Assembly (NCBI RefSeq): GCF_001194135.2
Contig: NC_068981.1
Coordinates: 133,894,684-133,945,314 of the forward strand
Reading direction: 5' to 3'
Length of the DNA: 50,631 bases
Source of the DNA: Octopus bimaculoides
Taxonomy: Eukaryota
Position 1 is the stretch's first letter. Each line of letters starts with the position of its first letter. Positions 47,235-48,533 of the stretch are shown one piece after another. The position numbers were made by a program, and so were the translations under genes. The notes below the pieces were generated by a model that saw only the letters and a list, made by a program, of their open reading frames with translations, made no database searches and was not told where the DNA came from.

Positions 47235-48310
47235 CTTACTGTTTCTACTGACATGGATATCCATTTTTTTCTTGTTGTCATTCTTTTCTCTTCCATGAAA
47301 TTTATTCGCATCTTCCGTAACTTTCAGAAATTTCATCTAAAACTGTATAGTTCCAGTGAATATATACAGAAATTGGTGAACGTAACGAATTCCTACGCTA
47401 GCCATTCAAAAGTGCTTTTATAAGTTTCTTTGCTTCCATTAAATTCCAAGTACAAGTACTGCAATATTTTTCAAAATAAATACAGAAAAAGTTATAATAA
47501 TAACATATCAAACAAAAAAACAACAGCGATCTCAAAATATCGGGTTTCCCCATACCAATTTTTTAACTTCGTTTTTAATTTCACGTTTAACACTATGACG
47601 ATTAAAATTGTTAATATTTTTTCCTCGACTTGTTAATTTATAAAAGTTATCCCCTCCGCTATTTCCATTCGGACTCCAAACTTGTCGTTCAATTGCGCAT
47701 GCGCGTATGCAGATTTCCAATCAACTAGACGACAGACAGGGCAGACTTCATGTGGTCGTTCGATAAACTAGAAACAAGGATCAATTCTCCTTGAAATCAC
47801 GTGGTTCTAACGACTTATAAAACAAAAGATACATCGGACATTATATATAGTCCGACAGAGATTCTTTCGATTTTTGATCAAAAAATAAAAGTGTAAATAT
47901 TAATGATATTAAGCAACGACCAATTAGACGTGTTCAATATCAGGTTTCGTTTTTTCATAACTTCCTCGAATTATGAAAGTTCAACAACACTACAACTATG
48001 AAAATGATGAGAATTTATTGTATTTGTGTTTTGGTAAAGCTTCATCATGGAAACCCTTTATCAAATGCATTCATTCAATGAAACGTGTACACCTGTTTCA
48101 GTTGTTGTGTACTCTACACTACATTATGGCACGAGCTATTGTTGAAATAAAAGTGAAATATTGCAGTTTTTCCTAGATATGATGGACTTCATATGTACTC
48201 AATCGTTATCTCTTTTCATGAAGCGTTCACACTGGCATAGTTTTGACAACTTCAAAGAGCTTTCCTTGTGCCTAATTTGAATCATCAGTAGTTTTCCTAT
48301 AAAAAAAATA

Positions 48311-48374
48311 GCTACTACTAAAGCAGCGCGGACCCGAACGCGCAGTCGCGCGTCCGCGCTGCTTTAGTAGTACC
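48311..48374. mobile_element. 64-bp hairpin deletion derivative of the 256-bp element
   Basis: Same termini (G[G/C]TACTACTAAAGCAGCGCGGAC...GTCCGCGCTGCTTTAGTAGTACC); absent at the matching site in the next unit (about 50030). Confidence 0.9.
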
Positions 48375-48533
48375 AAAAAACAAATAGACCGAGCGAAATA
48401 TGCATTTGCGTACAAAATATATGATTTACAGCGTTTTAACGTCAACAGATATGTTATGGATAATCGTAACTAGCAATGAAAAATATGATAAACACCTTCC
48501 AGAATTTACTATATCATTATTATCATTACAAAT

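What the first reader, a model, noticed from the sequence alone, without database searches (positions are those of the whole stretch)
48302..48386. 64-bp minimal hairpin transposon made by internal microhomology collapse
Seen: its first 50 nt match the reverse complement of the right TIR of the 256-bp element (one mismatch), and its last 14 nt are the other terminus. The join is GTCCGCGCT, a 9-mer that occurs as a direct repeat in both arms, so one deletion removes everything between. It sits in an A-rich site (imperfect TSD AAAAAAATA / AAAAAACAAATA) about 240-300 bp upstream of U6 copy 2 and about 30 bp from the -208 octamer-like motif. The matching site near 50030 is empty. Inference: a built-in route to an ultra-short MITE that may still be mobile and may modulate U6 expression.
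Basis: partly seen in the sequence, partly recalled or inferred. Interest (0 to 1): 0.7.

Follow-up and report, generated by a model that had tools for sequence, protein, structure and literature searches.

The report
64-bp collapsed remnant of a foldback transposon
A 64-bp hairpin-shaped piece of DNA upstream of a U6 snRNA gene is a shortened copy of a 256-bp non-coding transposon lying 520 bp away, made by a well-known kind of deletion between two 9-base repeats; nothing shows that it still moves or affects the U6 gene.

Summary
Window 48311-48374 is a 64-bp near-perfect palindrome. It equals the reverse complement of the 256-bp element at 48898-49153 with 192 bp removed between two direct copies of GTCCGCGCT, plus one mismatch (terminal GG to GC). 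The 256-bp element is a real insertion: it has a perfect 9-bp target-site duplication, and the same site is empty in both sister U6 units. It is a foldback-type, non-autonomous DNA transposon. Its GG termini, 9-bp duplication and 102-nt arms fit Merlin or Mutator/Foldback. The 64-bp copy is also an insertion relative to U6 unit 3 (74 extra bases), with an imperfect A-rich duplication.

Derivation by a 9-bp microhomology event is well supported, but three routes give the identical product: abortive gap repair, hairpin-aided replication slippage, and snap-back from one arm. All are known.

Mobility could not be tested. The source organism is absent from every collection I could search, and the window holds only these two copies. 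The mutated terminal base argues weakly against this copy being mobile. An effect on U6 is unsupported: the insertion lies at -301 to -238, outside the part of the promoter shared by all three U6 genes (from -148).

Verdict: a new member of a known kind, of low to moderate interest.

The parts
48311..48374 (.). 64-bp hairpin element, GCTACTAC...GTAGTACC. It has 24-nt terminal inverted repeats and an inner 5-6 bp stem.
   Evidence: Inverted repeat I8. DNA fold -30.7 kcal/mol, z = -8.0.
48352..48360 (+). Junction 9-mer GTCCGCGCT (element positions 42-50). This is the 9-nt overlap between the arm-derived 50 nt and the terminus-derived 23 nt.
48325..48333 (+). AGCGCGGAC (element positions 15-23), the inverted partner of the junction 9-mer. 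It could prime snap-back synthesis.
48302..48310 (.). Left copy of the putative 9-bp target-site duplication, AAAAAAATA.
   Evidence: Low-complexity sequence, so boundaries are ambiguous.
48375..48386 (.). Right copy of the putative duplication, AAAAAACAAATA. This reads as 9 bp plus a 3-nt insertion, or as AAAAAACAA matching 7 of 9.
50028..50039 (.). Empty homologous site in U6 unit 3, AAAAAAAAAATA.
   Evidence: Alignment A1.
48898..49153 (.). 256-bp foldback-type non-autonomous transposon, GGTAC...GTACC. Arms are 102 nt and 88% complementary. It is the parent type of the 64-bp element.
   Evidence: Inverted repeat I1. DNA fold -114.7 kcal/mol, z = -23.8.
48889..48897 (.). Left copy of the perfect 9-bp target-site duplication CAAAAGTGC of the 256-bp element.
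49154..49162 (.). Right copy of the perfect 9-bp target-site duplication CAAAAGTGC.
47407..47415 (.). Empty site of the 256-bp element in U6 unit 1 (a single CAAAAGTGC).
   Evidence: Alignment A2.
50545..50553 (.). Empty site of the 256-bp element in U6 unit 3 (a single CAAAAGTGC).
   Evidence: Alignment A2.
49104..49151 (-). Right-arm stretch of the 256-bp element that is 48/48 identical, as reverse complement, to 48313-48360 of the small element.
   Evidence: Inverted repeat I2.
48969..49083 (.). Inner part of the 256-bp element: CCCTAA-like repeats (48969-48997), a unique centre, then TTAGGG-like repeats (49020-49083). All of it is lost in the 64-bp form.
   Evidence: (D10, I4-I11).
48612..48718 (+). 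U6 snRNA gene copy 2, which lies between the two elements.
   Evidence: Rfam RF00026, 113.2 bits.

Best explanation
The 64-bp sequence is an internally collapsed copy of a foldback-type, non-autonomous cut-and-paste DNA transposon. The 256-bp neighbour represents the intact form of this family.

The family makes 9-bp target-site duplications and has GG...CC termini. It probably depends on a Merlin-type or Mutator/Foldback-type transposase encoded elsewhere in the genome.

Most likely course of events:
1. A full-length copy inserted into the poly-A tract about 300 bp upstream of U6 copy 2. This happened after the U6 units had duplicated.
2. That copy then lost its central 192 bp at that site.

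Each arm contains a small inverted repeat: AGCGCGGAC at positions 15-23 and GTCCGCGCT at positions 42-50. Because of this, the two arms carry a 9-bp direct repeat. Repair synthesis after an excision attempt, or replication across the extruded hairpin, realigned on that repeat. What remained was the 24-nt termini around an 18-nt arm remnant.

Shown: sequence identity, junction microhomology, insertion status, and ends that coincide with the transposon termini.
Inferred: the superfamily, the in-situ timing of the collapse, and the repair pathway.

The element is most likely a passive relic with no demonstrated effect on U6.
For: - The predicted deletion product, rc(256-bp)[1-41]+[234-256], equals the 64-mer except for position 2. 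The overlap is exactly 9 nt and uses the longest available direct repeat.
- The small element matches the right arm at all five arm-diagnostic sites it covers (28, 32, 43, 45, 47). The identity is 48/48.
- The 256-bp element is a clean insertion: perfect 9-bp duplication and two empty sister sites.
- The small element is also an insertion relative to unit 3. The 74 extra bases are about 64 plus 9 plus 1.
- Both of its ends coincide with the family termini. This points to transposase-defined ends rather than random copying.
- The insertion post-dates the unit duplication. The spacers differ by 9.3%, while the small element differs from the neighbour at 1 of 64 positions (P = 0.015 if they were equally old).
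- Terminal GG with 8-9 bp duplications and long inverted repeats is the Merlin signature (PMC8101967). Foldback structure with 8-10 bp duplications is typical of Mutator (PMC4079207).
- Microhomology-mediated miniaturisation is documented (PMC3814204).
Against: - In-situ collapse and arrival as a ready-made 64-bp element predict the same sequence at this locus. Nothing in the window separates them.
- The target-site duplication is imperfect (7 of 9, or 9 bp plus a 3-nt insertion) and lies in low-complexity sequence.
- The superfamily rests on duplication length and two terminal bases only. No transposase was found in the window.
- Only two family members could be examined.
Confidence: 0.5

Rival explanations
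1. The 64-bp form is a mobile mini-MITE subfamily. The collapse happened once, elsewhere or in the neighbour. The 64-bp element, with its 24-nt inverted termini, was then mobilised in trans and inserted here as a 64-bp unit, perhaps by a local hop from near the neighbour.
For: - It keeps both termini and a 24-nt inverted repeat (I8). That equals the lower limit of Merlin inverted repeats (24-462 bp; PMC8101967).
- An 80-bp palindromic MITE, MADE1, is an established family in the human genome (PMC1784062), so very short hairpin MITEs can exist as families.
- It differs from the neighbour at only 1 of 64 positions, although the spacers have diverged 9.3%. It lies 523 bp from the neighbour, which is compatible with local transposition.
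- It has a duplication-like flank of about the family length.
Against: - No second 64-bp copy could be found. The test was impossible beyond this 50-kb window.
- The left terminus reads GC instead of the conserved GG.
- The duplication is imperfect.
- On general physical grounds, 64 bp of duplex DNA is far below the length at which two ends can easily be brought together in one complex. This is inference and was not tested.
Confidence: 0.35
2. The sequence arose from a single arm by snap-back synthesis. A nascent strand copied the first 50 nt of one arm. It then folded back on its own AGCGCGGAC (positions 15-23) through its 3' GTCCGCGCT and copied the last 14 nt from itself. The second arm was never involved. 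This is a variant of the mechanism, not of the element's identity.
For: arm[1-50] + rc(arm[1-14]) gives exactly the same 64-mer as the deletion model. The 9-bp stem with an 18-nt loop exists within the arm.
Against: It cannot be distinguished by sequence, because the terminal 27 nt of the two arms are identical. It needs an extra step to explain why the product is flanked by a duplication on both sides.
Confidence: 0.1
3. This is not a transposition event at all. A double-strand break in the poly-A tract was filled with sequence copied from the neighbouring element's right arm (templated insertion during end joining). Alternatively, it is an assembly artefact.
For: The template lies only about 750 bp away and is 48/48 identical. 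The flanking duplication is imperfect.
Against: - The inserted piece starts and ends exactly at the transposon termini. Random templated copying would not do this.
- The excess length beyond 64 bp matches the 9-bp duplication of the family.
- There are no N runs or adaptor-like sequence at the site.
Confidence: 0.03

Closest known systems
Microhomology-mediated miniaturisation of DNA transposons (Ozma giving Gnome, Elf and Goblin in Aedes aegypti; PMC3814204)
   Same: A shorter non-autonomous form derives from a longer one by internal deletion between short direct repeats. Those repeats are 6-8 bp; here the repeat is 9 bp. The cause proposed there is gap repair with end joining or template switching after excision.
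   Different: - There the parent is an autonomous Tc1/mariner element, and the products are proven multi-copy families.
- Here the parent is itself a 256-bp non-coding foldback element and the product is known from one copy.
- Here the microhomology is perfect, with no junction scar, and follows from the palindromic design of the arms.
MADE1, the 80-bp palindromic MITE of the Hsmar1 family (PMC1784062)
   Same: A near-perfect palindrome made of little more than the two terminal inverted repeats of a DNA transposon. It folds into a tight hairpin.
   Different: MADE1 has 37-bp inverted repeats with a 6-bp loop, TA duplications and a mariner transposase, and it has many copies. Here the repeats are 24 nt around 16 nt, the duplication is 9 bp, and one copy is known.
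Foldback elements and their MITE relatives (Tetris and DAIBAM in Drosophila virilis; PMC4079207)
   Same: Long inverted arms whose inner parts are tandem repeats, no coding capacity, 8-10 bp duplications, and a short MITE that shares only the outermost part of the inverted repeats.
   Different: The inner repeats here are telomere-like hexamers (TTAGGG/CCCTAA). The element is much smaller (256 bp). The relationship between the long and short forms can be traced to a single junction.
Merlin superfamily non-autonomous elements (PMC8101967, citing Feschotte 2004)
   Same: Terminal 5'-GG, a 9-bp target-site duplication, and an inverted-repeat length within the 24-462 bp range.
   Different: No IS1595-type DDE transposase partner could be looked for. 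The assignment rests on structure only, and Mutator-like elements fit the 9-bp duplication equally well.

Membership tests
Class II cut-and-paste non-autonomous transposon (MITE in the broad sense) | Terminal inverted repeats | tested here: met
   256-bp element: 102-nt arms, 88% complementary. 64-bp element: 24-nt arms, 96% complementary.
Class II cut-and-paste non-autonomous transposon (MITE in the broad sense) | Target-site duplication of fixed length, with empty homologous sites | tested here: met
   256-bp element: perfect 9-bp CAAAAGTGC and two empty sites. 64-bp element: empty site in unit 3, but the duplication is imperfect.
Class II cut-and-paste non-autonomous transposon (MITE in the broad sense) | Many dispersed copies in the genome | not testable with these tools
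   Only two copies in the 50-kb window. The organism is absent from the searchable collections.
Merlin superfamily | 8- or 9-bp target-site duplication | tested here: met
   9 bp. Criterion taken from PMC8101967.
Merlin superfamily | Conserved terminal 5'-GG | tested here: met
   The 256-bp element starts GG and ends CC. The 64-bp copy has GC at its left end and CC at its right end.
Merlin superfamily | Autonomous partner encoding a DDE_Tnp_IS1595 transposase with matching inverted repeats | not testable with these tools
   No transposase among the ten ORFs scanned, all of 110 aa or more.
Mutator/Foldback group | Long inverted arms with internal tandem repeats and no coding capacity | tested here: met
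   The arms hold CCCTAA/TTAGGG-like hexamer arrays. Structural criterion from PMC4079207.
Mutator/Foldback group | 8-10 bp target-site duplication | tested here: met
   9 bp.
Mutator/Foldback group | MULE-type transposase partner | not testable with these tools
   None in the window.
   There is a single copy in the window. External searches were uninformative, because even the window's U6 25-mer finds nothing.
Helitron end or other hairpin-bearing repeat | Insertion between A and T without a duplication, with TC...CTRR ends | tested here: not met
   The ends are GG...CC, with a 9-bp duplication.

The most novel reading that the evidence does not exclude
The foldback element is self-miniaturising by design. 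The small inverted repeat inside each arm guarantees a 9-bp direct repeat between the arms. The family would therefore repeatedly collapse to the same 64-bp hairpin, and that hairpin would remain a substrate for the transposase. It would be among the shortest mobile elements known in a eukaryote.

Together with its 256-bp neighbour, it also brackets U6 copy 2 with compatible outer ends (48311-49153). A promoter-bearing U6 gene could in principle be moved as a composite.
Probability: 0.15. Interest if true: 0.5.

Novelty: new member of a known kind. Interest (0 to 1): 0.2.

Why it matters
If the 64-bp form proved to be a multi-copy family, this locus would be an unusually clean case of a MITE being born. 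Parent and product lie side by side, and there is a single unambiguous 9-bp junction. It would also help define the minimal substrate of a Merlin- or Mutator-type transposase.

As it stands, the finding is an ordinary deletion derivative of a small transposon. It is useful mainly for repeat annotation and as a possible presence/absence marker in a U6 gene array. There is no evidence that it changes U6 expression.

Tried and rejected
**Searches for more copies, all empty**
- The 21-mer terminus in metagenome, prokaryote-genome and viral contigs.
- A gapped hairpin pattern in genome contigs.
- A concatenated six-frame peptide query of the element against 5.8 billion proteins.
- Exact look-up of the two window ORFs that span the elements.
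- A literature search for the terminal sequences and the U6 5' end.
- blastn with word size 7 and nhmmer inside the window.

These negatives say nothing about copy number. The window's own U6 25-mer is also absent from those collections. A conserved GID4 exon finds no same-species protein: the best hits are 90-95% identical at the amino-acid level, and the two fetched loci share only exon-level DNA similarity with the window.

**Organism identification** failed.

**Nested-insertion reading.** I considered that a 183-bp piece flanked by a 9-bp repeat had inserted into a 64-bp ancestor. I rejected it because positions 207-233 of that piece are the inverted copy of positions 24-50. The 256-bp palindrome is therefore the primary structure.

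**Direct descent from the neighbour.** The small element agrees with the right arm at 5 of 5 diagnostic sites. This is not significant, because positions 43, 45 and 47 look like one clustered change in the left arm. Both sequences may simply retain the family consensus.

**RNA gene reading.** Rfam finds nothing at 48311-48374 that approaches a gathering score.

**Helitron reading.** Rejected on the ends and the duplication.

**Templated break repair.** Rejected because the insert ends exactly at the transposon termini.

Full report
**Context.** The window is eukaryotic. Rfam finds three U6 snRNA genes that score identically (113.2 bits) on the + strand, at 47127-47233, 48612-48718 and 50265-50371. 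A fourth, degraded copy lies at 1375-1470 on the - strand. The three good genes sit in tandem units spaced 1485 and 1653 bp apart. Units 2 and 3 are homologous over the whole spacer, which is 90.7% identical once the two insertions are removed. Unit 1 shares homology only from -148 relative to the gene.

**Checking the observation.** Window 48311-48374 reads GCTACTACTAAAGCAGCGCGGACCCGAACGCGCAGTCGCGCGTCCGCGCTGCTTTAGTAGTACC, 64 bp.
- It is a near-perfect palindrome with 24-nt arms that are 96% complementary.
- As single-stranded DNA it folds at -30.7 kcal/mol, against -11.9 +/- 2.3 for shuffles.
- The only related sequence in the window is the 256-bp element at 48898-49153.
- The first 50 nt of the small element equal the reverse complement of the 256-bp element's right arm, apart from position 2 (G to C).
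- The last 23 nt equal the terminus.
- These two matches overlap by exactly 9 nt, GTCCGCGCT.

That includes the flanks, the empty site near 50030, and the distances to U6 copy 2 and to the ATTTGCGT motif at -208.

**The 256-bp element.** It is a clean insertion into unit 2. It is flanked by a perfect 9-bp duplication, CAAAAGTGC. Units 1 and 3 both carry a single CAAAAGTGC at the homologous place. The ends are GGTAC...GTACC.

The element is essentially one long palindrome, with 102-nt arms that are 88% complementary and a DNA fold of -114.7 kcal/mol, z = -23.8. The outer 72 nt of each arm are unique, CpG-rich sequence. The inner parts are telomere-like hexamers: CCCTAA-like on the left and a longer TTAGGG-like array on the right. 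It has no coding capacity, and none of the ten ORFs scanned (all of 110 aa or more) matches a transposase family.

It is therefore a foldback-type non-autonomous DNA transposon. Two superfamilies fit:
- Merlin: terminal GG, 8-9 bp duplications and inverted repeats of 24-462 bp (PMC8101967).
- Mutator: most foldback elements are assigned here, and they make 8-10 bp duplications (PMC4079207).

I cannot decide between the two without the transposase.

**How the 64-bp form relates to it.** Each arm contains a small inverted repeat, AGCGCGGAC at positions 15-23 and GTCCGCGCT at positions 42-50. Because the arms are inverted copies of each other, this automatically creates a 9-bp direct repeat between them, at positions 42 and 234 on the strand of the small element. 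It is the longest direct repeat between the outer parts of the arms.

Removing the 192 bp between the two copies gives the observed 64-mer with a single difference. Three routes lead to that product:
- Abortive gap repair after excision, in which nascent strands copied inward from the two ends anneal at the 9-mer.
- Replication slippage. Extrusion of the central hairpin would help, because it brings the two repeats to within 27 nt of each other.
- Snap-back of a strand that had copied only one arm. I confirmed that arm[1-50] + rc(arm[1-14]) gives the same 64-mer.

The sequence cannot separate these, because the terminal 27 nt of the two arms are identical. All are variants of a documented process, microhomology-mediated miniaturisation of DNA transposons (PMC3814204).

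I considered the reverse reading, in which a 183-bp piece inserted into a 64-bp ancestor and produced a 9-bp duplication. I rejected it because that piece would have to carry an inverted copy of the host's positions 24-50.

**Is it an insertion, and how did it get there?** Unit 2 has 74 bases that unit 3 lacks at this point. That is 64 plus 9 plus one base of poly-A length variation.

The flanks read AAAAAAATA on the left and AAAAAACAAATA on the right. This fits a 9-bp duplication whose right copy gained 3 nt. Alternatively it reads as AAAAAATAG / AACAAATAG with shifted ends. The low complexity of the site leaves this open.

Importantly, the inserted piece begins and ends at the family termini. 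That argues for transposase-defined ends and against random templated filling of a break from the neighbour 750 bp away.

Two histories remain:
- A full-length copy inserted here and then collapsed in place.
- The element arrived already collapsed.

They predict the same sequence at this locus. I favour in-situ collapse slightly (0.5 against 0.35), for three reasons:
- It needs no assumption about the mobility of a 64-bp element.
- The deletion is built into the structure and so is likely to recur.
- This copy has a changed terminal dinucleotide (GC for the conserved GG).

This preference is weak.

**Age.** The small element differs from the neighbour's corresponding sequence at 1 of 64 positions, while the surrounding spacers of units 2 and 3 differ by 9.3%. 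If they were equally old, P(1 or fewer differences) = 0.015. Both insertions therefore post-date the unit duplication.

The two arms of the 256-bp element differ at 6 of their outer 72 positions. The small element agrees with the right arm at all five of those it covers. Three of these five (43, 45, 47) look like one clustered change in the left arm. The simplest reading is that the right arm and the small element both keep the family consensus. Direct descent from this particular neighbour is possible but not demonstrated.

**Mobility and copy number.** The organism is not represented in any collection available here.
- The 21-mer terminus, a gapped hairpin pattern and even the window's U6 25-mer find nothing in metagenome, prokaryotic-genome or viral contigs.
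- A conserved GID4 exon finds no same-species protein.
- A six-frame peptide query built from the element finds nothing.
- The window ORFs spanning the elements are not on record.
- The literature search for the sequences is empty.

These negatives carry no weight about copy number. Very short palindromic MITEs can form families, as the 80-bp MADE1 shows (PMC1784062), so mobility is not excluded.

**Effect on U6.** The insertion occupies -301 to -238. The following all lie downstream of it and keep their spacing:
- the TATA-like box near -28;
- the perfect octamer ATGCAAAT at 48534-48541 (-78 to -71);
- the ATTTGCGT motif at -208.

Unit 1 has the same U6 gene and the same proximal promoter but no homology upstream of -148. 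The conserved promoter core therefore ends well downstream of the insertion. Nothing supports a regulatory role. It remains a guess that only a reporter assay could test.

**Verdict.** The thing itself is a deletion derivative of a small foldback transposon, produced by a known kind of event. It is a new member of a known kind. Its main value would come from a genome-wide count of junction-bearing copies.

Noticed in passing
window 46979-50631 compared with 1-46000: The U6 array is a CpG-undepleted island. CpG observed/expected is 1.21 without the two elements, against 0.27 in the rest of the window, a vertebrate-like depletion. This suggests a heavily methylated genome with an unmethylated U6 cluster. 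It would also protect the CpG-rich elements (10 CpG in 64 bp) from decay.
   Followed up: partly
window 48969-48997 and 49020-49083: The 256-bp transposon carries inverted arrays of telomere-like hexamers, about 5 CCCTAA and about 10 TTAGGG units. Spread of this family would seed interstitial telomere-like, G-quadruplex-prone repeats. They are the only perfect TTAGGG/CCCTAA dimers or longer found in the window.
   Followed up: partly
window 48311-49153: The small and the large element bracket U6 copy 2 and its promoter. Their outer ends are in inverted orientation (GCTACTAC... and ...GTAGTACC). In principle this 843-bp segment is a composite that a transposase could move or rearrange. The outer flanks differ (AAAAAAATA and CAAAAGTGC), so it did not arrive as a unit.
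   Followed up: no
window 1375-1470 (- strand): A fourth U6 copy scores only 72.6 bits and is 83% identical to the array genes over the coding part alone, with no promoter homology. It is probably a retro-pseudogene. It lies beside a SINE-like sequence and near an exon of a GID4/Vac_ImportDeg gene at about 1831-2035.
   Followed up: partly
window 45120-46129: A large inverted repeat surrounds an N gap (45455-45701). The inner arms are 130 nt and 100% complementary; the outer arms are 134 nt and 96% complementary. It is either a big foldback element or an assembly artefact at a gap, and it lies just upstream of the U6 array.
   Followed up: no
window 46196-46693; 35974-36234; 32570-32758; 22935-23837: Several other, unrelated palindromic or inverted-repeat-bounded elements: 55-nt arms around 388 bp, 111-nt arms around 39 bp, 82-nt arms around 25 bp, and 141-nt arms around 621 bp. 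The genome seems rich in foldback/MITE-like repeats.
   Followed up: no
window 10990-12159 (- strand); 14465-14929 and 35229-35567: A degraded LTR-retrotransposon pol fragment with an RT-RNase H domain (Pfam E = 2e-24). Also two copies of a SINE-like repeat that ends in (CA)n/(TA)n microsatellites.
   Followed up: no
window 47127-47160 and the equivalent positions in copies 2 and 3: By my recollection of the usual metazoan U6 sequence, the U6 5' stem-loop here (GTACTAGCTACGGCGGTAC) differs from it, while the rest is near-canonical. It could serve as a taxonomic marker for identifying the source organism. No match was found in papers or collections.
   Followed up: partly
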